DNA of 38,000 nucleotides from Macrostomum lignano. Taxonomy: Eukaryota. Below are positions 1 through 32,810 of the stretch, piece after piece. Made by a program: the position numbers and the translations under genes. Below the pieces are notes generated by a model. The model was not told where the DNA came from, ran no database searches, and saw nothing but the letters and a program-made list of their open reading frames with translations. Numbering within the stretch: position 1 is the first letter of the stretch; every line of letters begins with the position of its first letter. The stretch spans positions 1 through 38,000 of the forward strand of contig NIVC01003428.1 in the NCBI GenBank assembly GCA_002269645.1, read 5' to 3'.

Positions 1-61
1 TAGTTACTTAGCAGTTTGATTTCGTTATACGACTACCTTCTAGCCACTTTCTCTCGCGCAG

Positions 62-3000
62 ATCTCCCACCTGACGGGCAAATCGGCTGTACTCGCCTTC
101 CTGCCTGCCGCCTCGGCGCTGCCGCACTCTGTGCTGCTCAATGGCGCTGAGACGCACCGCTGCGAAGCCGGCGGTCGCTGCCGGATCCGATTCGACGGCC
201 TGAAGCCGGACAATCTCTACCGAGCCGAGGTGCGCGCGCTGCCGTCGTCTGGGCGCGATTTGGCGGGACTGTCGGCCGGCGGCGCGGAGCGACGCCGCCG
301 ATTCTGACGCGGCTGTCGAGTTTCGAACCGGGCTGGGGCTCGGCCGGCCGGAGCCTCCAGCTAATGTGCAGGTAAGTGAGAGATCAGATGAGGTGTGACT
401 TGGGGCACCCTCTGGTCAACACCAAAGCGCATTGCCTGACGAGAAGAAATAAAATTGTGCGCGAGATTCATGTGCGGGTGATTTATAATTGGTCACATTA
501 ATTGCGTATTATTCCTAATGAACTACATTCATTTGGGCTTCTCCTGCGATTCAAATACACGAGGGTCAACCCTTTAGGCACAAGGAGTGTACATGTGAGG
601 CATTGTGTGTATGAGTGCCTGCCTGAGTACAGTATTGGTCACGCGCTTTTATGTGCTCAGGAGTCAGCGGAATGGGCAGAATTGCTGTCAGCGCTGGTTG
701 TGGGCCTTTTTTACGTTAAGGTGCGACCCTTCTGCAATTATTACGATTGTTAAGATATTATCATTATCAGAAACCAGAGCAACTTTATCAGAAACTTTAA
801 CATCTTCGAAAACCAGTGGAACATTCTCATAGGGAACTTTCTACCATCCATTCGACCATAGAAGACTCATAGGGGAATTACAAAGATGTCAAGGCTCCTG
901 GGGAATTGTTGAAATGCTGTCTCCCAATGCTTATAGACAATTGCTGAGACGTTAACGCTTACAGTAGAATTTCTGTAATGTTGTGTGAGGCTCTTAGGAA
1001 CAATCGATAAAATGTCAAGGTTCAAATGGCAAATTGCTGAGTTGTCAAGGTTCAGGGGGATTGCAAAAAAATTTATGGCTCATGGGGTTACCTCAGATGC
1101 TTTGAGTGTTAACAATACTGACTATACCAGCCACATCCTCTTTGTTGCCTCCCGACGGAGGGTGTGACGCAGATTGCTAGTACATCTATCTAAACCTTTC
1201 GCAACTAATTCACCCAGGTGGAATCGGACCTCGAAATGAGACCTTACTGGTGACCTGGACACCTCTAGCCGGTGCCGAGTCGAAGGGCACCCGGTTGGGT
1301 GGCTACGCGATCTACGCGGACGCCTCCCAGCTGGTGGCCACCTGCATGCAGGTCGACGCCGACCATTGCGTTGTTGCCATGGCAACGCTACCTACGAATG
1401 CCCGAGTAGTCACCTGCCGAACTGTAGCTACGATCAGGATGGACGAGTAGTTGAAAGCGAAGATTCGAGTCCCGCTTGCGAGCTCGACGACGTGATTCTA
1501 GCTGCAAGTTCAAGCTTGAGCCAGCAGGAACAGGTGCCTCTACCTCACGACGTGAGTTCGCGTTCTTTAAAAATAAAATTCTGAAAAATTTACACCCACT
1601 CGTATGTTTTCTGTTATGTTGTAAGATGCTTGTGCAACGTTTGTGTACTTTAAAGAATACGTACTTTTAAGGAGAATTTACAGCTTGTTAATGTAGACAA
1701 AGTCTGCAGATTAACAAAGCGCTTGGATTCCTGATGCAGTTCTATCTTTTAATTATTTCCTTAGCAAATTCTTACGTACAGAAAGGCTGCACTATTAAAA
1801 ACTCAAAATAACACGTGCTTCGTCAAAAAGTATTTTAACTGAATTTTTCTAGCGATTTATTAAAGTACTTCTAGGCGAAAAAAAGAACATTGTTCGAGAC
1901 AACGGTTTTCAGCAATATTTTTTGTTTAAAAAAGCGAAGGCAACAGCTCTGGGTGATAGAACTGGGTCTTTAAATTTTAAAAATTTTGTGGCTTTGTACG
2001 TAGACTTAAACATGTGCATCTATAAGCGTAATTCAGTTTGCGTAATCTCAAATACTGTGTAACATCGTATATAACGTTTAAACTCTACATTTTAATATCT
2101 CATCTCGCTGTAAATTAGACCACTGAAACACCAAAGGGTATGAGGACACACCGTCGAAACACCGAAGGGAATGAGGACACACCGTCGAAACACAGAAGGG
2201 AATGAGGACACACCGTCGAAACACAGAAGGGAATGAGGACACACCGTCGAAACACCGAAGGGAATGAGGACACACCGTCGAAATACAGAAGGGAATGAGG
2301 ACACACCGTCGAAACACAGAAGGGAATGAGGACACACCGTCGAAACACAGAAGGGAATGAGGACACACCGTCGAAACACAGAAGGGAATGAGGACACACC
2401 GTCGAAACACCGAAGGGAATGAGGACACACCACTGAAATGGCAATACTACATTAGCCCGCAGGAAATTAGCCCGCGGGAAGTTTGCCAGCAGACGTTTCC
2501 CGCAGACGTTTGCCCGCGGGCAAGCTTCCCGCGGGCTAATTTCCTGCAGGCTAATGTCGTACTGCCGTTTCGGGTCTATGACATTAGCCATCGAAACACT
2601 GAAGGGTACAAGCGTATGAGGACACACCATAATCGGGTTGAGATTATGACACCATTGAATTCAGGTAACATTTAAACAATTGTTACTAACACCAACTCCG
2701 TGACTCGCAATCCCAGGCAACCACAAACGAGTTTGGCATCTTCGTTAATTCAGCTGGTGTTCCAATTTTGTCGTCGCCAAATAGTGACGGAAAATTATTA
2801 GACGCCAACGGCAAAGCTTTGGCTTGTCGACGAGCGGTGGCATCGGTTGACCCGGAACTGGCGAGCAGCGCCTTATTGACAAACTAGACGGCTTGCCCAT
2901 TCGCGGTCTTCGACTTGGACCAAACGGAGTCCTACTAGACGAGTCCGGTTTGCCAGTTCGCGGTGAGAACGGCGAATTCTTCGGCGCTAATCATCGGCCG

Positions 3001-4527
3001 GTCTACGGTCGTCGAGGCGCCGAAGGTGAACTGTTGGACGAAGAGGGACAGGCTCTGCAGCAGCTGGGCTTGAACAGCTTTGGCGTGTTGGCCGATTCGA
3101 CCACCGGACTGCCGATTACCCGCCAGTCGGATGGTGCTCTACTCGACGCTAACGGCCAGCCAATCGATTGTCGACGTTGCGAGCTCAGCGCCAACGATTT
3201 GCTAGTCGATCCAGTCGACGGCTCGCCAATCGGCGTCACCAGTGTCAACGTTTTCGGCGTGCTGGTAGACTCGCAGGGCCGTCCGTTGCGCGGACCTCAG
3301 GGCGAGTTCTACGGAGCGAATCGGGCGCCGGTGTACGGCGGACTGCGCGGCCCTGACGGTCAGCTGATCGACCCGGCGAACGGCGGTCAGAGACGGACTC
3401 GAGTTAACGAGTTCGGTGCACTAGTGGACGCATCCACTGGCGAGTTGCTACTGGGTCCAGACGATCAGCTGTTAAATTCTCGGGCACAGCCAATGTCAAG
3501 CCGGCGGGTTCGGCTGGTTGAAGCGACGGAAGAGGGCGGCCAACAGCAGCTGGTGGACGCAGAAACTGGGGAGCCGCTGAGTCCGGAAACGGGCTGGCGT
3601 GTCAACGAGCACGGTGTCCTTGTGGACGCAGAGTCTGGCTTGGCTCTGCGTGGTCCTTCAGGCGAGTTTTTCGGTCCACCGGACGGTCTACCACTGGCCG
3701 GAGGTCCCACACGAGACGCCGAGGGTCGTCTGGTACGCGACGGCGTAGAAGATGGATCAGACTTAAGTGGTAAGCCGTTAAAAACGAAAGTCAACGACTG
3801 GGGCGTTCTAGTAGAGGTTGTCAGCGAAGGTGAAAACGCTGAGGAGCGACCAATTTTGTCGTCGGATGGTAAGCTTTTGGACGCGTCCGGCCGGGTCATC
3901 GACTGCCGAATCGTGCCAACAACAGCCGCAGCTCGGTCTCGTTTCGTCGACGACGTCGCTAAGAACAATGGACTGGAGCTGAGTGAGCACGGAGTGGTCA
4001 TCGACACGGCCAGTGGTCTACCGGTTCGAAGCCAGGCCGCTGGCGAGTTTCTCGGCACCGATGGTCGACCCGTCTACGGACCAAGAGACGCCGATGGCAA
4101 GCTTAAGATTGAAACGAAGCTGAATGATTACGGAGTTTTGGTCGACGCGACAACCGGGGAAGCAATCCGAGGACCGCGAGGACAGCTGTTAGACGCAAAC
4201 GGCCAGGCGATAACATGCGAGGTCGTTGAGCCCGGCTCGGACGGAGCCCTGCCGGCGCCGCCGACGGGTCAAGAGTATCGACTCAACGCGCACGGCGTAC
4301 TCATTAACTCCGCTTCCGGCCTGCCGGTGCGCGATTCCAACGGTCGATTCTACGGACTGAACCGGCGGCCAGTGTACGGGGAGAGACTGGCAAGCGGCAA
4401 GCTGGCTGGTGCGGTGCAGGTTGGTCCAGACGGCCATCTGGTGGACGCTGAGGGTAACCCGGTTAAAGGACCCGATGGAGAGCTGCTCGACGCCAATGGA
4501 CAGCCGATTGATGAGGCAGCTGTTGCA

Positions 4528-4559
<32 letters not shown>

Positions 4560-7121
4560 GGCTGATGCTGCTGCCACTACCGATACCGAAGCTGGAACGG
4601 GAGCCGAGACTGACGCTGCAGCCGCTGCTGGTGGGGCAACGGCTACAGCTGAAACGGTAACAGATGCCGTTGAGTCGGTGGAAGCCGCGGCAGAGACCGG
4701 AGACGGTGTCGCCAGTGGCGAGGAACTGGAAGCGGCGACTATTGCCACGGAGACGACGGAGACCGGGGCGCAGGCAGACTTCGAGGACGAGCCGCAGCCG
4801 GGCGATCCAGGCTTCTTTGGCCGCATCAAGAAAGGCTTCCAAGAGTTCCAAGAGAAGGTCGAAGAGTTCGCCGAAGAGACCAATGAGAAGATGAAGGAGT
4901 TCAACGAAGATACAAAGCGCAAGATGGAGGCGTTCAACGATGACACGCGCAAGAAGTTTGAAGAATTCGGCGAAGGCACAAAGAAGACGTTCGGAAATTT
5001 TGGCGAAAGCACGGCAGCGGCCTTCAAGAAGCTGGATCCGACGAGTTTAGGTGATGATGCGGCCGCGGCTCCGAAGGAGGAGACGGCTGAAGCGTCAACA
5101 TGATCATGATTTTCCTGGCGATGGGAGCTCGCGCCTTACCTGCACAGACAAGTCAATTATCACATGTTATTTCGGCAATTTCAATGCGTTTATTACAAAG
5201 AATCTAGCACAGTTATCACCACTGCACCGGCACCAAACAAATGGGTTCTAAAACTGCATACTGTGAAAGGTATCTATGCTAGAGATATGGCTACTGGTTA
5301 CTATGGTGATGGCGCTAAAACATGCTTGATAAAATATCATATTATTGCCATCAATTCAGTTTTAATACGGGTATAGATATTGCCTATAATTTTCCTATGC
5401 TCATATGCTATTTTTTGTTGTCGCGTTTTTCTGCCTACCGGTATGCGGTGCGACGTTTTTTAATTTCGAAAATAATGCAACTTACCGCTGTTAAAATAAC
5501 TTTCACCAAATCTTCTAAATTTTACATTTCTAGTCGGATTCCGATCAACAAAGTGAAGACAGAAGTGAGACCAGGACGCCGCGATCTCGTCCAAAGCCGA
5601 CTCGAATCTCCAACACGAATCTCAACCAGCATAGCAACCAATCTAGCAGACACGCTAGCGCTTCACCATCGCGTCGATATCAGACCTCGCCTTCGATTCG
5701 TGAGTGCTGGACTGAGAGTGCACTTATGTATGCAACTAAGATAGAGAGGCTTAACCATAGTACACCAACGAACCATAGTATCATAGTAAAATCATAAAAT
5801 GCGTCAAATTGAACCCACACTGATGAATAAAGTCTGTGAAAAACTTTATGCTTACCAATTTCAGTTGGGACATCAACTCCGAGACGCAGTCAGCAGGTGC
5901 AGCAGCAACAGCAACAGGTACTACAACAGCGGCAGAAGCAGATTCCGACGCAGCAACCAACAGCTGGGCGAGCACCTCATCGGGTGCATCGATATCGAGC
6001 GCATCATCGTCGACAGCAAGCTGACGATGCTTCTACTGACGAAGACGGCGCCTACGGCCAATCGGACGCGTTTCTGGTTGATTCATCAGCCAACGACAAG
6101 GATAACAACCAAAGCGACCAGGACATCGATCAAGGCAAAGAAGAGAGCTTTAAAGGGGACATTGTTGAAGAGGCTTCAACGCCGAGCAGCTGGCACCGAC
6201 GTCACCGACGTCACCGGCATCGGCACAGGACATCCAGACAGCAGCCCAATCGAATCTTTGTCGCCCTCTACGACTACGATCCGGCCTCAATGAGTCCGAA
6301 TCCCGACGGGGTGCAGCGAGAGTTGGCCTTTCTTGAGGGCCAGCTCTTGACTGTCTTCGGCAGCAGGGACGCCGACGGTTTTTATAACGGCGAGTGCGCA
6401 GGAAAGCTCGGACTGATTCCTGGAAACATGGTGGCCGAGGTGTCCGAGTACGAGTTGACTCAGAGCAAAATGAAACAATCCAGTGCCGGGTGAGGGATTT
6501 CTACTTCATATTTTACACTTTAACGACAGTTTGAGTTTAGACTAGATGTCGAAAACTGTAGCCAATTCAAACTACATTTATTTAAAAATCCAGCTTGAAA
6601 GAGAAATATTTTAAAGTACATTCGTGCATGCGTATTTTTGAATAAAAATTGGTAGCTCGTAGCTTGACTAGTTTCTCCACTGCATGTATGACTTCCCTAA
6701 ACATCCAGTTGGTTCAGAAGCTGACAAAACCAGCAAATCCACTTAACCCAGGCATGATGCAGGCTCAGATCTGCCGGGCAATGAGCAGTTATCAAAGCAT
6801 CACGATAGCAGAAAGAAGCAACAAAAGTGGAAATCTGCAACAACATCGCCGCTGCCACAGCAGATCGGTCGCAGTAGTCGTCAACGACAACGTTCAAGCT
6901 CGCGTCACCGCCTCATGGTTGCCCTGCACGACTTTGAGCCGGATCAAGCGCTGAATTGCGGATTCGGCCTCACCGCGGCGGTCGCCTTTCGCTCCGGCGA
7001 TTTGATCACGCCGTTGGGCCAGGCGGGCGAGGACGGCTTCCTACTGGCCAGGGTGGAACGGTCTCAGCTGGAGGGCTTCGTGCCGAGAGAACTTCTCAGA
7101 GTCTTATCGCCGGATGAATAA
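62..7121 (+). CDS. RIMBP2: RIM-binding protein (RIMBP2-like), 3' part, canonical SH3-containing isoform; 5' end lies outside the window
   Basis: Exons 62-371, 1218-1551, 5534-5699, 5865-6489 and 6752-7121, all with GT/AG ends and matching phases (0, 0, 1, 2). FN3 sequences ISHLTGKSAVLAFLP...FDGLKPDNLYRAEVRALP...AAVEFRT...PEPPANVQ|VES(G)PRNETLLVTWTP...GGYAIYAD...DHCVV...VTCRT match the 2nd and 3rd FN3 domains of RIMBP. SH3 IFVALYDYDPASMSPNPDGVQRELAFLEGQLLTVFGSRDADGFYNGECAGKLGLIPGNMV has the RIMBP-typical MSPNPD insert. A second SH3 (MVALHDFEP...GFVPRELL) ends at TAA 7119-7121. Three 1-bp frameshifts must be assumed (~285-300, ~1227, ~1431). Confidence 0.85.
2119..2434. repeat. Intronic minisatellite, 31-bp unit, ~10 copies
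   Basis: Unit GAAGGGAATGAGGACACACCGTCGAAACAC(A/C), seen at 2164, 2195 and onward. A degenerate copy resumes at ~2590-2630. Confidence 0.95.
2435..2571. mobile_element. Foldback/MITE-like hairpin element, 137 bp
   Basis: GAAATGGCAATACTACATTAGCCCGCAGGAAATTAGCCCGCGGGAAGTTTGCC (from 2435) is the near-perfect reverse complement of GGCAAGCTTCCCGCGGGCTAATTTCCTGCAGGCTAATGTCGTACTGCCGTTTC (to 2571). No clear TSD. Confidence 0.6.
2717..5103 (+). CDS. Large alternative (probably terminal) exon of the RIMBP-like gene: novel Gly-rich repeat domain, poly-Ala/acidic linker and 11-mer amphipathic helix
   Basis: Acceptor TCCCAG|GCA at 2716/2717 is phase 0, the same as donor GAC|GTGAGT at 1551/1552. The frame reads ATTNEFGIFVNSAGVPIL...LLDANG, needs one extra base at ~2870 (AGC G[G]C CTT = SGL), then continues as the 736-aa ORF 2893-5103 to TGA. 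Long, GC-rich, with a coherent internal repeat structure. Confidence 0.7.
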
Positions 7122-7414
7122 ATTGACAGTGGATACGGTCAATGAACGACTGAAGTAGAAAAATGACATTTAGAAGGAGCAATACGTAACATCTAGCGAC
7201 TTAGAACGACATGGGTAAGGAAGGAAACTTAGTTTCTGAGAAGATCGTTGAGGGCTCTCTTTTGCGCGAAAAAGTGGGATACTATATTGGAAGTACTATT
7301 AAATTTTGTAAAAACCTCCTTTAAATGAATTTCTGACTTAGAAAGGATCGACATAAAAGATGAAAATGCGTCACAAGTTTTGATAACGCATTTTTAAGAC
7401 TAATCTTTATAAAA

Positions 7415-7989
7415 TACAAGCTGTTGAAACCCGCGGAATTTGAACCCGGGGAATTCCAATCCCCGGAACTATTTTTGCATGTATTCTAAAATCAGCCCAT
7501 ACTGAAACAAAAACTTGTTAATAGTTAGTAGGATTCAGGTAAACAAAATGGAGTACATTCGCGTAAAATTAGGATTTCAGGCAAACATTGATATTGTTGG
7601 CTGGGGGGGGGGGGTGCTTTTTACTTTAAATAGGAAATTAATGTCTGCCTGACTCTAAAACATGTATTGGCAAACTCTGGCCTCTGCCTCTGACTCTCCC
7701 TCCCTTGGATCCTTTGAAACTTCTATCTTCTCTTCTGTTTCCTCTCTTCTTTCTCGTCCCTCGTCTCTTTTTCCTCTCTCCTCTCTCCCCTCTTCTCTCG
7801 TATCTTCCCTCATTTCTCTTCTTTTTCATCTCTCTTATCTCATTTCTTTTCTCTTCTTTTCTCTTTCCTCTCCTCCCACTCTTCTCTCGTCTTTTCCTTC
7901 ACCTCTCTTCTCTCTCGTCTGCTCTTTCATCTCTCCTTTTTCTTCTTTTATCTTTTCTCTCTTATCTCTTCTCGTTTCTATCTGCTCTG

Positions 7990-8044
<55 letters not shown>

Positions 8045-8254
8045 CCAATCTCTTCTCCAAGTTTTTTGCACTTTTAGGTGGGAAGACTCAAATTTAGGAA
8101 ATTTTAAAGGTAGCCTATGACACTTTCCGTAGTGAATTTAGGGTGGGTGCAAAATTTGGTGTAATTTGGTTGAGCGGTTTGGGAGTCTATAGCGAAGTAA
8201 TTTGTCCACAGACAGACACACACACACAGAGTTTTGACTTTTATAGGTAGAGAT
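7415..8254 (+). mobile_element. Putative non-autonomous Helitron-like (HINE/Lep1-type) element carrying microsatellites
   Basis: 5' end TACAAGCTGTTGAAACCCGCGG and 3' end AAATTTGG...GAGCGGTTTGGGAG...ACAGACAGACACAC...CTTTTATAGGTAGAGAT resemble the termini of known non-autonomous Helitron-like elements. Internal G12 run, pyrimidine tract and (CT)n. Recognised from memory of family termini, not from a search. Confidence 0.45.
7690..8050. repeat. CT-rich low-complexity tract ending in a (CT)n microsatellite
   Basis: Near-pure pyrimidine sequence, with perfect CT dinucleotides at ~7995-8040. Confidence 0.95.
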
Positions 8255-9728: not shown

Positions 9729-10906
9729 TCAGACTAAAACCAGCTCGAATACTTCCATTCCCACGAAGCCTTGGCATCTGTTGCCGAATCCACCGTCCAC
9801 GCAGGGAAAGACGTTGCAGAGATCCGCAGACTGATAGGGCAGACCATAGACTATGCGATCGCCGCAGTAGCACCACCTGCGATCGGCGATGCCAAAGTAA
9901 TTGAACGGCTTGGGTTTCCTCGCCGTTAAGCATTCTGTCATGCAGGTTGTCTGGCTCATTTCATCCAGGGGTCCCGCCACCTCCAGTTCTAGTACGGGAG
10001 GCAATTCGTCCGACAACAAATAGCAGCCTTTTGGAACGGCTGGAGTGCAAAAAATGGTGAAAGGAATAAATTTAGAGCACCCAGACCTCCTAAGCTTGTC
10101 TGTATCTGTTGTTATAGCCAGTATAATAGCATGGGCGGGGGGAGCTTGCGGCACCGGGGACACGTGCCCCCCCCCCCAAAAAAAATGAGTCCACGCGGCA
10201 CAAATCTATTGTGCCCCCCTGAATTTTTGAAATTTTGATATTTTAGTGCATAGTATTACGGGATATTGGTAATTTTTAGTGCTTTTTCTGATTTTAGGCC
10301 CTAATCGAAGCTTATAGGGACACCCGTGCCCCCTTGCCCTGTGCCTGGTGCCCCCCCCCCACTAAAATATTAGGCTCCGCCGCCCCTGTATAGGCTGTTG
10401 ACTAGTGAATGAAGACGCTGTCGTCTTCAAAGGTGGGACGATGGTTATATTTGCTTATTATTCTTTTATGAGATATTAAGAATTAAGAGCTTAAAAGCCT
10501 ATAGCTAATGGCTATATTTATAATTTAATTTAGAATATTTTTAATAACTATAGCTACATAATTTAATTTAAACAAAGTCTATCATTTATATATAATTTAA
10601 TTTTTTAAAATTCTATTATCTATATATTATTTAATTTAAACAAAGTCTATTATATGTATTTGATTTAATTTAAACAGTCTTTTATCTATATATAATTTAA
10701 TTTAAATAAAGTCCAATAAAGACGCTTAAGACGAGAATAATAGGCAATTAATGCACTAATTCTGGCTTATTCCGCTCATTTAAGCAAGAGAATTCCGACG
10801 ATTAAAAAGCTCAGATGAGTCCAAGTGTCTCACCTTTGAAAATGGCTGCAAATACGCCCTGAACAGAAAGAAGAACAATCAGAGTCGTCAGAGCTGAGCA
10901 CAGCAT
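9729..10906 (-). CDS. Small secreted single-WSC-domain protein (~149 aa), 2 exons
   Basis: Exon 1 (10906-10834) encodes the signal peptide MLCSALTTLIVLLSVQGVFAAIFK and ends G|GTGAG (phase 1). Exon 2 (10105-9729) follows AACAG| and continues in frame: DTDKLRRSGC...GCY...MSQTTCMTEC...YFGIADRRWCYCGD...CNVFPC...CQG...VFE. This is the WSC cysteine pattern. Confidence 0.85.
10130..10388. mobile_element. MITE-like insertion (CAGGGGCGG-type termini, hAT-like) in the WSC gene intron
   Basis: Left end CATGGGCGGGGGGAGC versus the reverse complement of the right end, CAGGGGCGGCGGAGCC. Internal C-runs. Flanks AATAG and TATAG match at 4 of 5 positions. Confidence 0.5.
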
Positions 10907-12729: not shown

Positions 12730-13265
12730 CATAGAGTGTGGGGGTGAATCGTCAAGTTGTCAAGGCTCATAGAGTGTTGGGGTGAATCGTCAAGTTGTCA
12801 AGGCTCATAGAGTGTTGGGGTGAATCGTCAAGTTGTCAAGGCTCATAGAGTGTTGGGGTGAATCGTCAAGTTGTCAAGGCTCATAGAGTGTGGGGGGTGA
12901 ATCGTCAAGTTGTCAAGGCTCATAGAGTGTGGGGGGTGAATCGTCAAGTTGTCAAGGCTCATAGAGTGTGGGGGGTGAATCGTCAAGTTTTTAAGGCTCA
13001 TAGAGTGGGAGTGAATCGTCAAGTTGTCAAGGCTCATAGAGTGTGGGGGGTGAATCGTCAAGTTTTTAAGGCTCATAGAGTGGGAGTGAATCGTCAAGTT
13101 GTCAAGGCTCATAGAGTGTGGGGGGTGAATCGTCAAGTTTTTAAGGCTCATAGAGTGGGAGTGAATCGTCAAGTTGTCAAGGCTCATAAAGTGGGGGGGG
13201 GGGCTGAATCGTCAAGTTTTCAAGGCTCATGGAGTGGGGGTGAATCGTCAAGTTGTCAAGCTCAT
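12730..13265. repeat. Minisatellite, 39-42-bp unit, ~13 copies
   Basis: Unit GTGAATCGTCAAGTTGTCAAGGCTCATAGAGTG(T)GGGG with a variable G run. Decayed relatives with the GTCAAGG core occur at ~880-1100 and 13300-13480. Confidence 0.95.
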
Positions 13266-14267
13266 GGAATAACTGAATTGCTGTGGCTCATAATAGACAG
13301 ATCATTTCTGACAGGTCAAGGATTACCGGGGAAAATTGCTAGTGATTTAAGGCTATGAGGGAGTCGTTTAATAGCTGAAGCTCAAGGGCAATGAGGGAAC
13401 TGCTAAGATGTCATTTCTCATGGGGGCCGGATTTCTGAGATGTCAAGGCTTCAAAGAAGAACTGCTGAGGTGACAAAAGATTTGCTCAGATGTTGACTGG
13501 AATAGATTTTGGCTAATAGGAATTCGTGCTGGACTGTTTGGGCGAGGATTAGGCTAAATGATACTGATATCTGCTAAATGGAAAATATTGATTAGACAGA
13601 ATTGATTCCTTGACTTGAGCGAATAAAAATGGGCATATAGCAATTTAGCAATAGCAATGTCATCAAGTGTTGAGTACTCTAGTGAGCTCAGTTGCGAACC
13701 CAGTCCATTGATGCCAAATTCTGATAAAGCTATTTTTATTTTCATTTTTAACACGAGTAAATTTCTGTCTCTTGTTGCAGAGCACCCGAAATGTAAGTTC
13801 ATCATTGATGCACCCTTATTGAACTTTTATTTTCTTCCTATGTGTTTAAATTGCGACACTTACATAAACCTTTGCACTGACTGGTGTGGGACAATGGCAG
13901 AAACGGATCTCGCTCTCACTCATAAATTTACCCAATTAGCGTCTGAGCACGAGCTCAAGGTGCCTTCGGTCCTCTGGCCGGACCCACTTCGAACTCTGAG
14001 CTGAAGATCGCGTCTTCGTTGGGATCGACCCATCCCCAGGCACACACAATACAGTACGAATCTCCAGCCCTCTAAGAAATAACGCAGCTCACTCAAAATG
14101 CTCTTGGATTCAACGAGTCCGACAGGCAAGTGACAGGGCTTGGTTGCACGGAGCGCTGAGTAGTATCGTAGTTGACTGACTCAGCTGAGTGAGCTCTCGA
14201 TCGTCTGAGTTTATCTGAGTATCTGAGTCTGAGTAGACTCTGCGCACCACCCATGCTGTCAACCTCA

Positions 14268-18854: not shown

Positions 18855-19915
18855 TTACACTGGTGTTGGGACAATGGCAGAAACAGATCTCGCTCTCAGA
18901 TTGATCCAATGAGCCTCAGAGCACGAGCTCAAGGTACCTTCGATCCTCTGGCCGGACCCGCTTCGAGCTCTGAGCGGAAGATCGCGTCTTCGTTGTGATC
19001 GACCCGTCCCCAGGCAGACACAATACAGTACGAATCTCCAGCCCTCTAAGAAATAACGCAGCTCACTCAACATGCTCTTGGATTCCACGAGTCCGACAGG
19101 CAAGCGAGCGACAGGGCTTGGTTGCACGGAGCGCTGAGTATTATCGTAGTTGACTGACTCAGCTGAGTGAGCTCTCGATCGTCTGAGTTTATCTGAGTAT
19201 CTGAGTCTGAGTAGACTCTGCGCACCACCCATGCCATCAACCTCAACACAAATGATATAAATATTGTGCACTGTTTCATCATTGGGTGCACCGACCCCGA
19301 CTACAACTGACAATGCAACTAGTGACTGTAGCGCCCTTCACTTTGCTTGTCCTTTACTTTGCATTAAAATTTCAGTTAAATTTAAAGAGGCTGCTACGAT
19401 TATATTTGGGGTCCATCACTCCATCTCTAATCGGCTACGGATCATCCAGCGAGTCCATGAAAATCGAGAGATGTCAAAAGGACTGCAGTGTCACTACAGC
19501 TCGCTACTATGGAGTAATACGTGGAAAAATTTGCTACTGCGGTGATGAAATAAGGGGTACACGATTGTCTTTAAGAAAATGTGATTACAGGTGTCCGGGA
19601 AATCGAAAGCAGATCTGCGGTGGTGAATGCATAATGGTTGTGTATGAGTAGCCCTTCCTAATTGAGGCCTGATTAACTCATTAGACTAACTTTTCAAAAA
19701 AACGTCATTTAAAAATCATGTTGGACTCTGATTATTACGAGTAAATAAACACAATCTTTAAACAGTGTCCGTAGTGTCCGTGTTTTCTGAAACAATATTT
19801 CTCAAAAAAGTTTTGCTCATAAAAGTGCTGGAGCAGAGCTGCACAATGAAAAAGATGGCCACAGCCGCATGTTTTTGTGCAGCGCACAGGCTGCTGCAGC
19901 TGTAGAGAGAAAAGT
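18855..19915 (+). repeat. Tandem segmental duplication, copy 2
   Basis: Paralog of 13870-15340, lacking the 14491-14789 insertion. Confidence 0.9.
19313..19651 (+). CDS. WSC-domain protein copy 2 (5' structure uncertain)
   Basis: Open frame MQLVTVAPFTLLVLYFAL (hydrophobic, signal-like) ... SSESMKIERCQKDC...YYGVIRGKICYCGD...CDYRCPGNRKQICGG...VVYE*. The expected GCYD motif (GGCTGCTACGAT, ~19389) is in another frame. Confidence 0.65.
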   Translation: MQLVTVAPFTLLVLYFALKFQLNLKRLLRLYLGSITPSLIGYGSSSESMKIERCQKDCSVTTARYYGVIRGKICYCGDEIRGTRLSLRKCDYRCPGNRKQICGGECIMVVYE

Positions 19916-23311: not shown

Positions 23312-26300
23312 TCAAGGCGTAAGCCGCTTCGGGTCGCGTGGAAACAAGGAAGTCTTGCGGATGTTGTCCAACCCGAGAAACAACATGGTGACCCGCTCCA
23401 GACCTGCGGCAATTCGTGAGGGGTACAAGTACACGCACTAGTCATGTTGAGTAATAATTAGTCAGCTCAATGACCCCCTCAATAATTACAGGAGATGGCA
23501 ATGACCCCCACCCCCATAATTACAGTGGAGGGCAATGACCCTACCCTCTCGAATTATAACGGAAAGCTTTGACCACCGCCACCCATCCACCCTCATAAAT
23601 ATCCGCCCCTTCGGCATCCACCCTCATAAATATCCGCACCTTCGGCATCGGCCCTCATAAATATCCGCCCCTTCGGCATCCGCCTTCATAAATATCCGCC
23701 CCCATCGGCACCCGCCCTCATAAATATCCGCCCCATTGGAATCCGCCCTCATAAATATCCGCCCCCATAAGTATCCGCTCTCATAAATATCCGCCCCCAA
23801 TGGAATCCGCCTTCATAAATATCCGCCACATCGGCATTCGCCCTCATAAATATCCGCCCCATCGATCCTCCCCTTAGTCTCCGCCCCCAAGCAGCCCCCC
23901 TAAAACACACGGAGCCCTCACCAATGCCTCCGCCAGCATGGGGCGGGCAGCCGTACTTGAAGCAATCAACATAGGACTGCATCTTAGCCGTATCGATGCC
24001 AAAACCCTGGGCCCGTTCAACCAACAAGGCCGGGTCGTGAATGCGCTGGGCGCCGCTCAAGATCTCTTCGCCTCGCATAAAAAAATCGTAGCTATTCGAA
24101 TAGCCGGGCCTGGCCGGGTCGGGCATCGTGTAGAACGGCCGAGCAGCCAACGGGAACTTATCGAGTATATAAAAGTCCGTCTTGTACTTTGCTTTAACCA
24201 GACGGCCAAGCAGTTTCTCGTTAGGCGTTGACAGATCGTCAAAGTCGCCCTGTTCGGCTCCGGCCTCTCTTAGCATCCTGACGGCTTCGGGAAACTCTAG
24301 ACGAAGAGTTGGTTCGAGAAACTCGAACGGCTCAGCCGGGTACTGCTTGCACACGGTGGAGATTAGATCGGCGCAGCTCGCCTGCAGGCCTTTGAATATG
24401 GCCACAAATAGTCGGCTGAGAGTGTCCAGCACCTCGTGGTAATGACTAAGGAACGCCATCTCCAAGTCTAGGCCAATAAATTCGGTCAAGTGCCGATGCG
24501 TGTTCGAGTCCTCCGCCCGGAATACGCTGCCGATGGTGAACACTCGATCGAAATCCCCCGCTATGGCCATCTGCTTGTAGAGCTGGGGAGACTGGGCCAA
24601 GTAGGCCTTGGACTTGAAGTACGTCACCTCGAATACGTTGGCGCCGCCCTCTGATGCAGCGCTGATGATCTTCGGCGTGTGGATCTCCACGAAGCTTTCA
24701 GCTGCGGGGATTGCAGATTTGATGAGGGACTCTGATTGGGGATTCTGATTGGGGATTCTGATTGGGGATTCTTATTGGGGATTCTGATTGGGGATTCTGA
24801 TTGGGGATTCTTGTTGGGGATTCTGATTGGGGATTCTGATTGGGGATTTCTAATTGGGGATTTCTAGTTGGGGATTCTGATTGGGGATTTCTAATTGGGG
24901 ATTTCTAATTGGGGATTTCTAGTTGGGGATTCTGATTGGGGATTCTGATTTAGGATTCTAATTCGGGATTCTGATTTGGGATTTCTAGTTGGAGTTTCTG
25001 ATTGGGGATTTTGGTTGGTGATTCTGGTTGGGGATTCTGATAGGGGAATTCCGGTTGGGGATTCTGATCGGGGATTCTGGTTGGGGATTCTGATTGGGGA
25101 TTCTGATAGGGGAATTCCGGTTGGGGATTCTGATCGGGGATTCTGGTTGGGGATTCTGATCGGGGATTCTGGTTGGGGATTCTGATAGGGGATTCTGGTT
25201 GGGGATTCTGATTGGGGATTCTGATAGGGGATTCTGATAGGGAAATTCCGGTTGGGGATTCTGATCGGGGATTCTGATTTAGGATTCAAATTCGGGATTC
25301 TGATTTGGGATTTCTAGTTGGAGATTCTGATTGGGGATTTTGGTTGGTGATTCTGGTTGGGGATTCTGGTTGGGGATTCTGATTGGGGAATTCCGGTTGG
25401 GGATTCTGATCGGGGATTCTGGTTGGGGATTCTGATTGGGGATCCTGGTTAGGGATTCTGATCGGGGATTCTGGTTGGGGATTCTGATTGGGGGTTCTGG
25501 TTGGGGATTCTGATTGGGGGTTCTGGTTGGGGATTCTGATTGGGGGTTCTGGTTGGGGATTCTGATTGGGGATTCTAATTGGAGATTGGATGAATTCAGG
25601 TTATGGATACTACGAGCTACTTTATTACATGCACCTATTATACTACTGCTAGCTAAGGGTAGTTAATCAGTAGGCCAGCAAGAACTCACCAGCCAGAGTG
25701 TCTCTGAAGAGTCGGCAAACTTCAGCCTCTAATCGGAATACGGCTTGGTTGGTTGGAGTACGCAGATCGATGACCCGATTATCGAGTTTAATCTCCTGAC
25801 CGGCTGTGGCTAGAGAGGCTTGCTGTTGATCTGGGCGCATGGCGTCTTCAACTTGCAGTGGCAGGCGGGGCTCCGCAGCCGACACGCACCAGATCTCAGT
25901 GGTATGCAGCTCCACCTGATTTCGATTCGGAGATTTACTGTCATGTATATCTAATCTGCCTAGTCTATCTGACCCCCTAGTCTATTCGACGGATCTAAAT
26001 CTAAGTCTATCTACCAGATTTTAAATCTAAGTCTATCTGCCAGATTCTAAATTTAAGTCTATCTGCCAGATCTAAATCTACTCAGATCTACTCTATCTGC
26101 CAGATCTACATCTACCCAGATCTACTCTATCTGCCAGATTTAAATCTACCCAGATCCAGTCTATCTGTCAGATATAAATCTATTAATCGCTAATCTGCAA
26201 CAGAGCGAGCTGATGCCAATAATTTCTCACCTCCTGCTGCGAGCACGCGGCCACAGGTGAATCCACTTTACGCAGCACGCCAGCCACATCAACAATGGAC

Positions 26301-27916
26301 TCTTTACTAACTGACGCGGCAAACTTCATCATCTGACGGGACACAGCCGAGCCAACAGACAGCACACACTGCACAGAGTAGTGCTGATGCCGAATAACAA
26401 AGAAACCAGTTTTGCCTTTGAACCGAGACGTGTGCAGGCGGCCTCGAATCCACACGGATTTCCCATCCAAGCTGGACTCCAACAGTTTGATAGGCGAGTA
26501 GGATTTGCTCAGAAAGTTCTCCGATCGGTTTAACGGCATATTGCCGTACAAACCCTGCGACACGTCGGCCTCGGACGATTCCGACGCGTCGGCAGCGGCA
26601 TCGCCAGCGGAATTCTCCGTGGATGGGGCGCCTGCGGCTGCTTTATGGGCGGCTTTTTTCTCCTTTTTGGCCGCCTTTTTAGCCGCTTTCTCTGCCGCTT
26701 TCTTGGCGGCCTTGTCGCTTTTATTCAATTGAAAGGTGGGGGGGGGGTTTCCTGTAGGAAGCCAGCCAAGTCGGCAAACGGGAGCTGCTGGGATGCTGAG
26801 ACTCAATGGGGAGTTGCTGAGATGCATACTCATATCTTGACACACCTATCAACATCTCTAATCTACCCATATCTAGCCTATCAATATCTCTAATCTACCC
26901 ATATCTAGTCTCCCCATCGATATCTATAATCTACTCATATCTTGACTCACCTATCAACATCTCTAATCTACCCATATCTAGCCTATCAATATCTCTAATC
27001 TACCCATATCTAGCCTATCAATATCTCTAATCTACCCATATCTAGTCTACCCATCGATATCTCTAATCTACTCATATCTAGTCTCTCCTATCAATATCTC
27101 TAATCTACCCATTTCTAGTCTCTCCTATCGATATCTCTAATCTGTCTATATCTAGTCTCTCCTATCAATATCTCTAATCTACCTATTTCTAGTCTCTCCT
27201 ATCGATATCTCTAATCTGTCTATATCTAGTCTCTCCTATCAAAATCTCTCATCTACCCATATCTAGTCTCCCCATCGATATCTATAATCTACTCATATCT
27301 AGTCTCTCCATCAATATCTCTAATCTACCCATATCTAGTCTCTCCTATCAATATCTCTAATCTACCCATATATAGTCTATCACATCGATATCTCTAATCT
27401 ACCCATATCTAGTCTCTCCTATCAATATCTCTAATCTACCCATATCTAGTCTATCACATCGATACCTCTAATCTACCCATATTTAGTCTCCCCATCGATA
27501 TCTATAATCTACTCATATCTAGTCTCTCCTATCGATATCTCTAATCTGTCTATATCTAGTCTCTCCTATCAATATCTCTAATCTACCCATATCTAGTATC
27601 TCCTATCAATATCTCTAATCTCTCTAATCTAGTCTATCACATCGATATCTCTAATCTACCCATATTTTGTCTCCCCATCGATATCTCTAATCTACCCATA
27701 TCTAGTCTCCCCATCGATACCTATAATCTGGACGAGGATGTGAACCCAGCAGAGCAGCTGATCAAAATGCGACTCATATCTAGTCTCTCCTATCGATATC
27801 TCTAATCTACTCATATTTAGTCTCCCCATCGTATAATCTACCCATATCTAGTCTCACCAACTAACTGCTTACCTATTGTCAGCGGCAGGTACTTCCACAG
27901 CTACGGGTTCCGACAT
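23312..27916 (-). CDS. DARS1: Cytoplasmic aspartyl-tRNA synthetase, complete, 5 exons, 542 aa
   Basis: Exons 27916-27873, 26717-26231, 25915-25690, 24701-23922 and 23403-23312 total 1629 nt with consistent phases (2, 0, 1, 1). Motifs: [96 protein letters not shown]. Confidence 0.97.
23590..23860. repeat. Minisatellite in DARS1 intron 4, ~31-bp unit
   Basis: Unit CTCATAAATATCCGCCCC...GG(C/A)ATCCGCC. Confidence 0.9.
24730..25585. repeat. Minisatellite in DARS1 intron 3, 13-bp unit
   Basis: Unit G(A/G)TTGGGGATTCT, with block duplications (24940-25030 resembles 25270-25360). Confidence 0.95.
25950..26180. repeat. Degenerate repeat in DARS1 intron 2
   Basis: Recurrent TCTATCT(G/A)CCAGA...TAAATCTA. 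Confidence 0.8.
26835..27855. repeat. Minisatellite in DARS1 intron 1, 32-37-bp unit
   Basis: Unit TCTAATCTACCCATATCTAGTCTCTCCTATCAATATC and variants. Confidence 0.95.
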
Positions 27917-31293: not shown

Positions 31294-31439
31294 AGCGATG
31301 CAGTTATCAGAAATTTGAAGAATATTTCAGAAGGTTGACATTTTACCGAAATATAGAAAATATAAAACGGCTGAACCTGGTTCTGAAGCATCTGAAAAAC
31401 TGAAACTAAAAAAACTAAGTTGCTGGGATGGGCCTAATG

Positions 31440-31985
31440 GGAAAGTGAGATAAGAGCTTATAGAATATGGGAAGGTGAGATTGGAGCTTACAGATTATGG
31501 GAAGGTGAGATTGGAGCTTACAGATTATGGGAAGGTGAGATTGGAGCTTACAGATTATGGGAAGGTGAGATTGGAGCTTACAGAATATGGGAAAGTGAGA
31601 TGGGAGCTTACAGATTATGGGAACGTGAGATGGGAGCTTACAGAATATGGGAAAGTGAGATTGGAGCTTACAGAATATGGGAAGGTGAGATTGGAGCTTA
31701 CAGAATATGGCAAAGTGAGATTGGAGCTTACAGAATATGGCAAAGTGAGATTGGAGCTTACAGAATATGGGAAACTGAGATGGGAGCTTACAGAATATGG
31801 GAAAGTGAGATTGGAGCTTACAGGATTTGGGAAAGTGAGATTGGAGCTTACAGGATATGGGAAAGTGAGATTGGAGCTTACAGGATATGGCAAACTGAGA
31901 TTGGAGCTTACAGAATATGGGAAACTGAGATTGGAGCTTACAGGATATGGGAAAGTGAGATCGGAGCTTACAGAATATGGGAGTC
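31440..31985. repeat. Minisatellite, 30-bp unit, ~18 copies
   Basis: Unit GGGAA(A/G)GTGAGATTGGAGCTTACAGAATAT. Confidence 0.95.
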
Positions 31986-31999
31986 TGAAAAAGTGATTG

Positions 32000-32490
32000 G
32001 GGTGTGATAAAGGAGAGTGGGAAAGTGATTATGGGCGTGGTAAAGGAGAGTGGGAAAGTGATTATGGGTGTGGTAGACTGTGGGAAAGTGATTATGGGTG
32101 TGGTAGACTGTGGGAAAGTGATTATGGGTGTGGTAGACTGTGGGAAAGTGATTATGGGTGTGGTAAAGGAGTGTGGGAAAGTGATTATGGGTGTGGAAAG
32201 AGAGTGTGGGAAAGTGATTATGGGTGTGGTAAAGGAGTGTGGGAAAGTGATTATGGGTGTGGTAAAGGAGTGTGGGAAAGTGATTATGGGTGTGGAAAGA
32301 GAGTGTGGGAAAGTGATTATGGGTGTGGTAAAGGAGTGTGGGAAAGTGATTATGGGTGTGGTAAAGGAGCGTGGGAAAGTGATTATGGGTGTAGTAAAGG
32401 AGTGTGGGAAAGTGATTATGGGTGTGGTAAAGAAGTGTGGGAAAGTGATTAGGGGTGTGGTAAAGGAGTGTGGGAAATTTATTATAGGTG
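32000..32490. repeat. Minisatellite, 30/33-bp unit, ~15 copies
   Basis: Unit GGGAAAGTGATTATGGGTGTGGTAAAGGAGTGT. Confidence 0.95.
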
Positions 32491-32810
32491 TGGTAAAGCG
32501 ATTAGACTGCTATTTAAAAATGCTTAGTGCTGTTACAACCAGCAAGGAAGAAAAGATGAGTCATACTTTTTTATTAATATAGACGCATATCATGTTCTTA
32601 ATTATGCGAAACGCCCAAATTATTTTATTTAGATTAAGTTGTTTTTGTTTATTTGTTTTGTTTATTCTGAATAAAATTGTACTACAGGCAGACAGACAGC
32701 AAACTTTCGAGCAGAAAGAGCTATTGTTATTTTTTTCAAAGGCGCTATGATCATAGCGGATTAAATAATGTTATTTAGTTGCTATGTTGCTATGCAGGTA
32801 GTGTCCTTAC

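What the first reader, a model, noticed from the sequence alone, without database searches (positions are those of the whole stretch)
1552..5533. RIMBP gene carries a 2.4-kb alternative last exon that swaps out both C-terminal SH3 domains
Seen: the FN3 exon donor (1551/1552, phase 0) fits two phase-0 acceptors. One (5533/5534) leads through 5534-5699, 5865-6489 and 6752-7121 to the canonical SH3-SH3 end. The other (2716/2717) leads into a ~795-codon exon that ends at its own TGA (5101-5103). Established: RIMBP C-terminal SH3 domains bind PxxP motifs of RIM and of voltage-gated Ca channels at active zones. Inference: one locus makes a canonical synaptic scaffold plus an isoform whose FN3s are followed by a novel repeat domain and a candidate lipid-binding tail. 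A phase-0 donor-like ACG|GTAACA at 4656/4657 could instead let 2717-4656 act as an in-frame cassette that keeps the SH3s.
Basis: partly seen in the sequence, partly recalled or inferred. Interest (0 to 1): 0.8.

Follow-up and report, generated by a model that had tools for sequence, protein, structure and literature searches.

The report
Orphan repeat exon inside RIMBP intron
An animal synaptic scaffold gene (RIM-binding protein) carries a large protein-coding exon of no known family in one intron; it probably gives an alternative C-terminus without the two SH3 domains, but the exon is frame-broken in this assembly and no transcript data could be checked.

Summary
The window starts inside an animal RIM-binding-protein (RIMBP) gene. 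The path 5534-5699 / 5865-6489 / 6752-7121 encodes a clean SH3-SH3 end.

The intronic exon is real coding sequence:
- It has a 750-codon open frame (2851-5103).
- It holds five diverged ~115-residue super-repeats, under protein-level constraint.
- An Ala-rich linker and a 77-residue amphipathic helix built of 11-residue repeats follow.

It is not the continuous 795-codon exon described. The phase-0 frame entered at 2717 stops at 2885-2887. The long ORF lies in another frame, so there is a 1-nt frame break at 2851-2884. Three similar breaks lie in the upstream FN3 exons and none in about 6 kb of other coding sequence examined, which suggests local assembly error.

The exon has no ATG for 258 codons and a consensus branch point and acceptor. 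No alternative first exon was found upstream. An alternative RIMBP 3' exon is therefore the best reading (about 0.5).

Evidence against: no canonical poly(A) signal before 5534, no orthologue among 1.8 billion representative proteins, and absence from a beetle RIMBP locus. The 4656 cassette donor is at chance level. RNA evidence is needed.

The parts
62..371 (+). RIMBP exon encoding the second FN3 domain and the start of the third (…VEFRTG…PPANVQ). Donor CAG|GTAAGT at 371/372. Contains a frame break at about 240-305.
   Evidence: tblastn of Daphnia RIMBP residues 521-580 hits 56-238. The three-frame view and the Daphnia sequence 'VEFRTLPKGVPDPPVDVQVELGPQDGTLLVTW' support the break.
1218..1551 (+). 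RIMBP third FN3 (Ig_RIMBP2) exon, with donor GAC|GTGAGT at 1551/1552. Two frame breaks: 1218-1230 (VES / GPRNETLLVTW) and 1425-1447 (…RTVAT / DQDGRVVESEDS…).
   Evidence: Pfam PF25523 E=3.7e-13 on the mended translation. tblastn hits 1223-1429. Frames shown.
1552..2716 (+). Intron upstream of the big exon. It is AT-rich and holds a 31-nt x ~10 tandem array (2125-2431) and a palindrome with 56-nt arms (2435-2571). It holds no ATG-initiated exon with a usable phase-0 donor.
   Evidence: repeats; scan for first exons.
2684..2716 (+). Branch-point consensus TACTAAC (2684-2690) and acceptor CCCAG (AG at 2715-2716). The frame of the first repeat unit opens only at 2690, and this is the only AG between there and that unit, so it is the only acceptor that includes the unit.
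   Evidence: Direct reading of the sequence; frames.
2717..2884 (+). First 56 codons of the exon (ATTNEFGIFVNSAGVPILSSPNSDGKLLDANGKALACRR…), which form the first A-type repeat unit. This is the frame that is phase 0 with the 1551 donor. It is closed by TAG at 2885-2887.
   Evidence: It aligns with the other A units at 49% identity. tblastn self-hit E=1.8e-5.
2851..2884 (+). Zone open in both frames, in which a 1-nt indel must lie (the frame break of the exon).
2851..5103 (+). 750-codon open reading frame plus TGA (5101-5103). First ATG only at 3493. GC by codon position 0.74/0.48/0.61 in the repeat part.
2726..4512 (+). Repeat domain of five super-repeats of 110-130 residues plus a final half unit. 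Each super-repeat has an A unit (N-x-F/W/Y-G-V-L-V-D-x-x-T-G-x-P-I…D-G-x-L-L-D-A-N-G-Q-P-I-D-C-R) and a B unit (…G-V-L-V-D-x-x-G-x-P-x-R-G-x-x-G-E-F-x-G-x-x-x-x-P-V-Y-G). Predicted to form short beta-hairpins.
   Evidence: 40-51% identity between units; pN about 0.4 against pS about 0.75 (saturated). AlphaFold2 models of low to moderate confidence, strands only.
4513..4809 (+). Ala/Thr/Glu-rich low-complexity linker, including a GCT-rich run at 4519-4574. Contains the donor-like ACG|GTAACA at 4656/4657.
   Evidence: pLDDT below 50.
4810..5040 (+). Seven 11-residue repeats (x-x-x-x-K-hydrophobic-x-x-F-x-x) that form one long amphipathic helix.
   Evidence: 33-nt tandem repeat. Hydrophobic moment 0.40 at 98-100 degrees, z=5.3, 0 of 2000 shuffles reach it. 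AlphaFold2 helix at residues 654-727, pLDDT 70-84. Pfam Apolipoprotein only 14.9 bits against a cut-off of 90.
5104..5533 (+). Sequence between the exon's stop and the canonical acceptor. It would be the 3' UTR and poly(A) region if the exon is terminal. It has no AATAAA or ATTAAA, only weak variants: AACAAA 5236, GATAAA 5328, AATAAT 5471, AATAAC 5495.
5534..7121 (+). Canonical RIMBP 3' end, exons 5534-5699, 5865-6489 and 6752-7121 (386 aa). SH3-II at 6236-6481, SH3-III at 6909-7115, stop TAA 7119-7121. AATAAA at 7117-7122 overlaps the stop.

Best explanation
The block 2717-5103 is a lineage-restricted coding exon of the RIMBP gene itself. It is used as an alternative 3'-terminal exon, joined to the FN3-exon donor at 1551. 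The isoform would keep the N-terminal SH3/FN3 part of RIMBP. It would replace the linker and the SH3-II/SH3-III tandem by about 795 residues: five beta-hairpin super-repeats, a disordered Ala-rich linker, and a 77-residue amphipathic helix that could lie on a membrane or vesicle surface. Such an isoform should lose the PxxP-dependent contacts that the SH3 tandem makes with the Ca channel, RIM, Unc13 and the transport adaptor. The frame break at 2851-2884 is most likely an assembly indel.

Shown here: the coding nature of the exon, its repeat anatomy, the splice-site geometry, and the amphipathic tail.

Inferred: the 1551>2717 junction, the terminal-exon status, membrane binding, and that the frame break is an error.
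For: (1) Real coding sequence.
- A 750-codon ORF has chance probability about 2e-12.
- Codon-position GC resembles the other genes in the window.
- Repeat units are saturated at synonymous sites (pS about 0.75) but conserved at replacement sites (pN about 0.4).

(2) It cannot be a first exon. There is no ATG for 258 codons, the first being at 3493, yet that part is made of constrained repeat units.

(3) The acceptor is good.
- TACTAAC lies 27 nt (branch A) upstream of CCCAG|G.
- The acceptor has the same CCCAG|G form as the gene's acceptors at 1217 and 6751.
- It is the only AG that lets the first repeat unit be read.

(4) It is on the same strand as RIMBP and is phase-0 compatible with the 1551 donor.

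(5) No ATG-initiated exon with a phase-0 donor of reasonable strength exists in 1552-2716. Only two poor candidates exist in 372-1216.

(6) It has its own stop codon. Any downstream splicing would leave a premature stop.

(7) The canonical isoform needs no extra exon. The FN3-3 to SH3-II linker is about 219 aa without it, as in Daphnia (about 210 aa). So the exon is an alternative, not a constitutive part.

(8) The frame breaks are probably errors.
- All four lie in window 1-2884.
- None was seen in the long ORF, the SH3 exons or AspRS; the DnaJ ORFs, inspected by eye only, also look intact (about 6 kb of coding sequence).
- There are no in-frame nonsense substitutions.
Against: - No RNA evidence of any kind could be consulted.
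- As assembled, the 1551>2717 product would terminate at 2885-2887.
- There is no AATAAA or ATTAAA in the 430 nt after the stop, so terminal-exon status has no positive signal.
- No protein with this repeat domain, fused to FN3 or not, exists among 1.84 billion representative proteins. The best hits are motif-level: 3.8e-11 for a bacterial protein and about 1e-5 for small animal proteins.
- None of the 29 RIMBP hits is close to this species.
- The beetle RIMBP locus has no large ORF at that position.
- A weakly similar hairpin-repeat gene in another animal contig is a stand-alone gene, not linked to RIMBP.
- In Drosophila, RIM-BP lacking both C-terminal SH3 domains hardly reaches the terminal (PMC7337501). 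A natural SH3-less isoform would therefore need another targeting route.
Confidence: 0.5

Rival explanations
1. Independent gene on the RIMBP strand. The exon belongs to a separate transcription unit. Its first exon(s) would lie in an upstream RIMBP intron or beyond the window, or it would receive a trans-spliced leader at 2717. It would encode a stand-alone hairpin-repeat/amphipathic-helix protein.
For: - The domain has no relation to any RIMBP in the databases.
- A weakly similar repeat gene in another animal contig (L003) stands alone next to unrelated genes.
- Two weak ATG…GT candidates exist in 372-1216.
- The acceptor with a strong branch point would also suit trans-splicing.
Against: - No ATG-initiated exon with a phase-0 donor exists in the 1165-nt intron directly upstream.
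- The first 258 codons have no ATG but are constrained coding sequence. A leader without an in-frame AUG would therefore not explain them.
- The candidates in 372-1216 have poor donors (GTGATT, GTGTGA) and no coding character.
Confidence: 0.22
2. Decaying or dead exon. The frame break at 2851-2884 is real. The exon, and perhaps the FN3 exons with their own breaks, no longer gives a full-length product. Only the canonical or a shortened product matters.
For: Four frame breaks lie in window 1-2884. As assembled, the 1551>2717 frame ends after 56 codons.
Against: - 2250 nt downstream remain open (p about 2e-12).
- The SH3 exons are intact.
- There are no nonsense substitutions.
- The breaks are confined to one stretch next to a tandem array and a palindrome, which is the pattern expected of unpolished assembly, not of uniform decay.
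- An AG at 2864-2865 or 2867-2868 would also restore a phase-0 entry into the long ORF, though both are poor acceptors.
Confidence: 0.13
3. In-frame cassette. 2717-4656 is spliced to 5534 through the GT at 4657. This would insert the repeat domain between the FN3 and SH3 modules and keep the SH3 tandem.
For: 4656/4657 is phase 0 in the long ORF and 5534 is phase 0.
Against: - GTAACA scores 9 on a simple consensus scale. At least 15 other GT sites in the exon score higher, and the gene's real donors score 11-17.
- The constrained amphipathic tail (4810-5040) and its stop codon would be left unused.
- Phase agreement alone is a 1-in-3 chance.
Confidence: 0.05

Closest known systems
RIM-binding proteins (Drosophila Rbp/RIM-BP, vertebrate RIMBP2 and TSPOAP1, Daphnia RIMBP)
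   Same: The host gene has the family's FN3 cluster (Ig_RIMBP2). It also has the C-terminal SH3-II/SH3-III tandem, 57-60% identical in SH3-II to Daphnia, fish and mammal proteins. The FN3-3 to SH3-II linker length matches Daphnia.
   Different: None of the 29 RIMBP hits is close to this species (best 33-39% identity over 40-44% of the query). No protein in the collections carries the hairpin-repeat domain. The beetle locus has no ORF at this intron position.
Engineered Drosophila RIM-BP lacking SH3-II+III (Petzoldt et al. 2020, PMC7337501)
   Same: It has the same domain loss as the proposed isoform. The tandem that binds the Ca channel, Unc13A and the adaptor Aplip1 is absent, while the N-terminal region and FN3 domains are kept.
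   Different: The engineered protein has nothing in place of the SH3 domains and is nearly absent from terminals. Here about 795 residues with an amphipathic helix would replace them. The consequences are unknown.
Amphipathic helices with 11-residue repeats (exchangeable apolipoproteins, alpha-synuclein, perilipins, group-3 LEA proteins); the comparison rests on established knowledge of these families
   Same: There are seven tandem 11-residue repeats with a narrow hydrophobic stripe flanked by Lys and an acidic opposite face. The helical hydrophobic moment is large and a long helix is predicted.
   Different: There is no sequence membership. Pfam Apolipoprotein scores 14.9 bits against a cut-off of 90, and apoA-I in the PDB search has E=0.84. 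Phe is the dominant hydrophobic residue. Lipid binding is untested.
Gly/Asp hairpin repeats 'DG-x-LLD-x-x-G-x-P-I-x-G-x-DG' in a bacterial TrbI-domain protein (P0001), a CpaB/RcpC-type protein (P0005) and small animal proteins (P0004/P0160; P0004 passes Pfam DUF3659)
   Same: They share a short motif and tandem organisation. hhalign gives probability 96% over 32 columns to P0004. phmmer gives 3.8e-11 to P0001.
   Different: Identity is 23-27% with many gaps. The ~115-residue A+B super-repeat, the FGVLVD start and the PVYG end are not found in those proteins. The window ORF itself does not reach any Pfam or NCBIfam threshold.

Membership tests
RIM-binding protein family (host gene) | C-terminal tandem of two SH3 domains | tested here: met
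   Pfam SH3_2 E=1.7e-12 with two stretches, plus SH3_9. tblastn to Daphnia SH3-II (57% identity) and SH3-III (35%).
RIM-binding protein family (host gene) | Central cluster of three FN3 / Ig_RIMBP2 domains | tested here: met
   The second and third domains are present (56-238, 1223-1429). Pfam PF25523 E=3.7e-13 after mending a frame break. The first domain lies outside the window.
RIM-binding protein family (host gene) | N-terminal SH3-I domain | not testable with these tools
   It would lie upstream of the window start.
Alternative last (3'-terminal) exon | One upstream donor compatible in phase with two acceptors | tested here: met
   The 1551 donor is phase 0. 2717 is phase 0 for the first repeat unit and 5534 is phase 0 for the SH3 path. 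This is compatibility only, with a 1-in-3 chance per pair.
Alternative last (3'-terminal) exon | Continuous reading frame to its own stop codon | tested here: not met
   The frame from 2717 stops at 2885-2887. The long ORF with TGA at 5101-5103 is in another frame. This would be met only if the 1-nt break is an assembly error.
Alternative last (3'-terminal) exon | Own cleavage/polyadenylation signal before the next acceptor | tested here: inconclusive
   There is no AATAAA or ATTAAA in 5104-5533, only weak variants. The canonical end has AATAAA at 7117. About 0.4 AATAAA matches would be expected by chance (my estimate from base composition, not a tool result), so absence is weak evidence.
Alternative last (3'-terminal) exon | Transcript junctions 1551>2717 and a poly(A) end after 5103 | not testable with these tools
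   No RNA data were available. The species is absent from the protein and contig collections.
In-frame cassette exon (2717-4656) | A donor of normal strength at the 3' end of the cassette | tested here: not met
   GTAACA at 4657 scores 9. At least 15 GT sites in the exon score higher, and real donors score 11-17.
Exchangeable-apolipoprotein-like 11-residue-repeat amphipathic helix | 11-residue periodicity and an amphipathic helical face | tested here: met
   33-nt repeat. Seven 11-residue repeats in register, moment z=5.3. Helix with pLDDT 70-84.
Exchangeable-apolipoprotein-like 11-residue-repeat amphipathic helix | Sequence membership (Pfam PF01442 or similar) | tested here: not met
   14.9 bits against a cut-off of 90. 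PDB apoA-I E=0.84.
Exchangeable-apolipoprotein-like 11-residue-repeat amphipathic helix | Binding to lipid or membrane surfaces | not testable with these tools
   This needs a liposome or lipid-droplet binding assay.
DUF3659 / Gly-Asp hairpin repeat proteins | Match to the family profile above threshold | tested here: not met
   The window ORF has no DUF3659 hit at E<=1. Only the distant hit P0004 passes (25.7 against 24.8 bits). The similarity of the ORF to P0004 covers 32 columns.

The most novel reading that the evidence does not exclude
By choice of 3' exon, an active-zone scaffold gene makes a second protein. In it, the SH3 tandem that binds the Ca channel and RIM is replaced by a lineage-specific beta-hairpin repeat array and a long amphipathic helix of the apolipoprotein/synuclein type. 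This would give the RIMBP N-terminal/FN3 module a direct, SH3-independent attachment to membranes or synaptic vesicles. It would also be an example of a new domain family born inside an intron of a conserved synaptic gene.
Probability: 0.2. Interest if true: 0.65.

Novelty: new variant of a known kind. Interest (0 to 1): 0.4.

Why it matters
RIMBP is a core organiser of release sites. Its known functions run largely through the C-terminal SH3 tandem, which binds Ca channels, RIM, Unc13 and a transport adaptor.

A natural isoform that keeps the scaffold-integrating N-terminal and FN3 parts but swaps the SH3 tandem for a membrane-seeking helix would be a new way to use this scaffold. It could act as a competitor of the canonical form or as a vesicle or membrane tether.

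The exon is also a clean case of an orphan, internally repeated coding exon under constraint, useful for studying how new domains arise. If it turns out to be a nested gene or an assembly-damaged relic, the finding is an ordinary annotation matter.

Tried and rejected
- Word-indexed search of the 750-aa ORF against 5.8 billion proteins gave no hit, not even to itself.
- Exhaustive phmmer of the repeat domain against 1.84 billion representatives gave 7 weak, motif-level hits.
- Pfam, NCBIfam and PDB sequence searches reached no threshold.
- Single-sequence AlphaFold2 of the whole ORF gave a repeat domain with pLDDT below 50; only the tail helix is credible.
- AlphaFold2 of one super-repeat, with the other units as its alignment, gave pLDDT 65.5. 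Foldseek against the PDB gave nothing below E=0.09. The top hits, the hairpin repeats of glucansucrases and choline-binding proteins, are not significant.
- Species identification failed. The best AspRS hit is 78% identical and unnamed, and named hits are mostly arthropods at 72-74%. Rfam and tRNA scans found nothing.
- A transposon or viral origin was rejected. There are no terminal repeats around the ORF and no family hit.
- I tested a 52-nt mini-intron (2665-2716) joining an ATG at 2646 and rejected it. The ATG is in the wrong phase, and the phase-0 frame has a TGA two codons upstream of the donor.
- Alternative acceptors at 2865/2866 or 2868/2869 would enter the long ORF in phase 0. They lie in coding-like sequence without a pyrimidine tract, so they are considered unlikely.
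- The antisense ORFs (3465-4058, 4189-4851, 4350-5027) are low-complexity by-products of the GC-rich sense frame.
Full report
**What the window is**

The window is animal genomic DNA. Its first 7.1 kb holds the 3' part of a RIM-binding-protein (RIMBP) gene on the + strand.
- Daphnia RIMBP aligns by tblastn to 56-238 (second FN3), 1223-1429 (third FN3), 6236-6481 (SH3-II) and 6909-7115 (SH3-III).
- Pfam gives Ig_RIMBP2 (E=3.7e-13) for the third FN3 exon and SH3_2 (E=1.7e-12, two stretches) for the 3' exons.
- A database search with the spliced canonical product finds only RIMBP2/TSPOAP1-type proteins at 33-39% identity.
- The neighbouring AspRS finds nothing closer than 78%.

So the gene family is clear, but the lineage is not represented in the collections. 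It may be an arthropod or another poorly sampled invertebrate.

**Check of the observation**

These points hold:
- All the named splice sites exist: donor GAC|GTGAGT at 1551/1552, acceptor CCCAG|G at 2716/2717, acceptor TTTCTAG|T at 5533/5534.
- The further exon borders are as given.
- The path 5534-5699 / 5865-6489 / 6752-7121 is 1161 nt and translates without a stop to a 386-residue SH3-SH3 end.
- An AATAAA overlaps the stop codon.

The '~795-codon exon' does not hold as stated.
- 2717-5103 is 2387 nt, not a multiple of three.
- The frame that is phase 0 at 2717 is open only from 2690 to 2884 and ends at TAG 2885-2887 after 56 codons.
- The long ORF, 750 codons from 2851 to TGA 5101-5103, is in another frame.
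- Both pieces belong to one protein. The 56 codons encode a unit (NEFGIFVNSAGVPILSSPNSDGKLLDANGKALACRR) that aligns with the other A-type units at 49% identity.
- The ORF's own repeats hit 2693-2884 in the other frame with E=1.8e-5.

A single-base indel therefore lies between 2851 and 2884.

**The frame breaks**

The same kind of break occurs three more times upstream:
- at about 240-305 in the second-FN3 exon;
- at 1218-1230 in the third-FN3 exon (…PPANVQ|VES then GPRNETLLVTW);
- at 1425-1447 in the same exon (…RTVAT then DQDGRVVESEDS).

Each is supported by the Daphnia sequence VEFRT…PPVDVQVELGPQDGTLLVTW…VTVRTKARESQSGDS.

The rest of the coding sequence examined shows none. That covers the long ORF (2250 nt), the SH3 exons (1161 nt) and AspRS (about 1.35 kb by tblastn); the DnaJ ORFs, which I only read by eye, also look intact. 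There are no in-frame nonsense substitutions.

Four indels confined to positions 1-2884, next to a tandem array and a palindrome, look like a locally unpolished piece of assembly rather than gene decay. This is an inference, and only reads can settle it.

**Anatomy of the exon**

The product has three parts.

1. Residues encoded by 2726-4512 form five super-repeats of 110-130 residues plus a final half unit.
   - Each has an A unit (N-x-aromatic-G-V-L-V-D…T-G-x-P-I…D-G-x-L-L-D-A-N-G-Q-P-I-D-C-R) and a B unit (…G-V-L-V-D-x-x-G-x-P-x-R-G-x-x-G-E-F-x-G…P-V-Y-G).
   - The units are 40-51% identical as protein.
   - Between units, synonymous sites are saturated (pS 0.65-1.0) while replacement sites differ by about 0.4. 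The duplications are therefore old and the sequence has been kept as protein.
2. 4513-4809 encodes an Ala/Thr/Glu-rich low-complexity linker.
3. 4810-5040 encodes seven 11-residue repeats (x-x-x-x-K-hydrophobic-x-x-F-x-x).
   - The DNA shows a 33-nt tandem repeat.
   - The helical hydrophobic moment is 0.40 at 98-100 degrees (z=5.3; 0 of 2000 shuffles reach it), with no signal at other angles.
   - AlphaFold2 predicts one long helix there with pLDDT 70-84.

The repeat domain is modelled only as short strands at low to moderate confidence. It has no significant structural neighbour.

Further support that this is a real gene piece:
- A 750-codon open frame at this composition has chance probability about 2e-12.
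- Codon-position GC resembles the other genes of the window.

**Relatives**

None of substance was found.
- The word-indexed search found nothing.
- An exhaustive phmmer of the repeat domain against 1.84 billion representatives gave seven hits, none below 1e-11.
- Those hits are bacterial proteins with DG-x-LLD-x-x-G-N-P-I-L-G-x-DG-K-P-L hairpin repeats (a TrbI-domain protein and a CpaB/RcpC-type protein) and small animal proteins from metagenomes.
- Pairwise identity is 23-27% with many gaps. A profile comparison aligns only 32 columns.
- One of the animal relatives sits on a contig next to Rpb1, a carboxylesterase and a chondroitin transferase. There it is part of a multi-exon stand-alone gene, not linked to RIMBP.
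- Pfam, NCBIfam and PDB sequence searches give nothing above threshold.
- The RIMBP locus of the beetle Dendroctonus ponderosae has no large ORF between the third FN3 and SH3-II, and no similarity to this exon.

The exon is therefore lineage-restricted, or at least unsampled.

**Which transcript does it belong to?**

Sequence alone gives these pointers towards RIMBP:
- The exon cannot start a protein. The first ATG is 258 codons in, at 3493, and the codons before it are constrained repeat units.
- Its 5' border is well defined. The frame opens at 2690, and the only AG before the first repeat unit is at 2715-2716. That AG is preceded by a perfect TACTAAC at 2684-2690 and has the same CCCAG|G form as two other acceptors of this gene.
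- The exon needs a phase-0 donor upstream. A scan of 1552-2716 found no ATG-initiated exon with such a donor. In 372-1216 there are only two poor candidates.
- The RIMBP donor at 1551 is phase 0 and of normal strength.
- The canonical product needs nothing extra. Its FN3-to-SH3 linker is about 219 residues without the exon, as in Daphnia.

Together these make an alternative 3' exon of RIMBP the simplest reading.

These points go against it:
- The frame break.
- The absence of AATAAA or ATTAAA in the 430 nt between the stop and 5534. Only about 0.4 AATAAA matches would be expected by chance (my estimate from base composition), so this is weak evidence.
- The lack of any RNA or comparative support.

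**The cassette alternative**

The GT at 4657 is phase 0, but GTAACA scores 9 on a simple consensus scale. At least 15 other GT sites inside the exon score higher, and the gene's real donors score 11-17. Using it would also discard the constrained amphipathic tail. I rate this option as unlikely.

**Likely function (inferred)**

In Drosophila, the SH3-II/III tandem binds the Ca channel Cacophony, Unc13A and the kinesin adaptor Aplip1. A construct lacking both domains is almost absent from terminals. The N-terminal region and the FN3 domains govern integration into the scaffold (PMC7337501).

An isoform ending in the repeat array and amphipathic helix would therefore lose those contacts. It would need another route to its site of action.

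The tail has the hallmarks of surface-seeking helices of the apolipoprotein, synuclein and perilipin kind: 11-residue repeats, a narrow Phe-rich stripe, Lys at the interface and an acidic far side. This comparison rests on established knowledge of those families. Membership in them was tested and not met. It is a plausible membrane or vesicle anchor.

**Verdict**

The sites and the coding block are real. The exon is not continuous as assembled.
- It would be a new variant of a known kind of gene. It is of moderate interest until RNA data exist.

Noticed in passing
window 1-2884 (breaks at ~240-305, 1218-1230, 1425-1447, 2851-2884): Four homology-supported single-base frame breaks cluster in the first 2.9 kb. 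About 6 kb of other coding sequence examined in the window shows none. This suggests a locally unpolished assembly stretch rather than pseudogenisation.
   Followed up: partly
window 2121-2628: An intronic insert: a 31-nt unit repeated about 10 times (2125-2431), directly followed by a palindrome with 56-nt arms (2435-2571). It is bracketed by related CACTGAA…GGACACACC copies at 2121 and 2597. It is foldback- or MITE-like, and the unit occurs nowhere else in the window.
   Followed up: partly
L003 9087-10931 (ENA metagenome contig k141_302075, sample ERZ27250226): An animal contig carries a multi-exon gene with GPDGKP / D-x-x-G-N-P hairpin repeats that is weakly similar to the window ORF (tblastn 6e-9). 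Its neighbours are Rpb1, a carboxylesterase and CHGN, not RIMBP. A relative (P0004) just passes Pfam DUF3659.
   Followed up: partly
window 2864-2869: Two adjacent AGs (2864-2865 and 2867-2868) would each give a phase-0 entry into the long ORF just downstream of the frame break. They lie in coding-like sequence without a pyrimidine tract, so they are probably coincidental.
   Followed up: no
window 9729-10163 (-) and 19286-19651 (+): Two ORFs with WSC domains (Pfam E=5.6e-07 and 4.2e-14), on opposite strands about 9 kb apart. Their gene structure was not worked out.
   Followed up: no
window 23315-26470 (-), 29238-31293 (-), 34603-36498 (-): Three genes lie on the minus strand: a cytoplasmic aspartyl-tRNA synthetase (four exon hits by tblastn, no frame break), a bHLH-zipper gene, and a type-A DnaJ gene (DnaJ_C and CXXCXGXG domains).
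   Followed up: partly
window 7700-8100, 12843-13358, 24891-25289, 31415-32582, 33319-33992, 36029-36498: The window is unusually rich in minisatellites with units of about 12-90 nt. They create long spurious ORFs on both strands, and several lie inside introns of the neighbouring genes.
   Followed up: no
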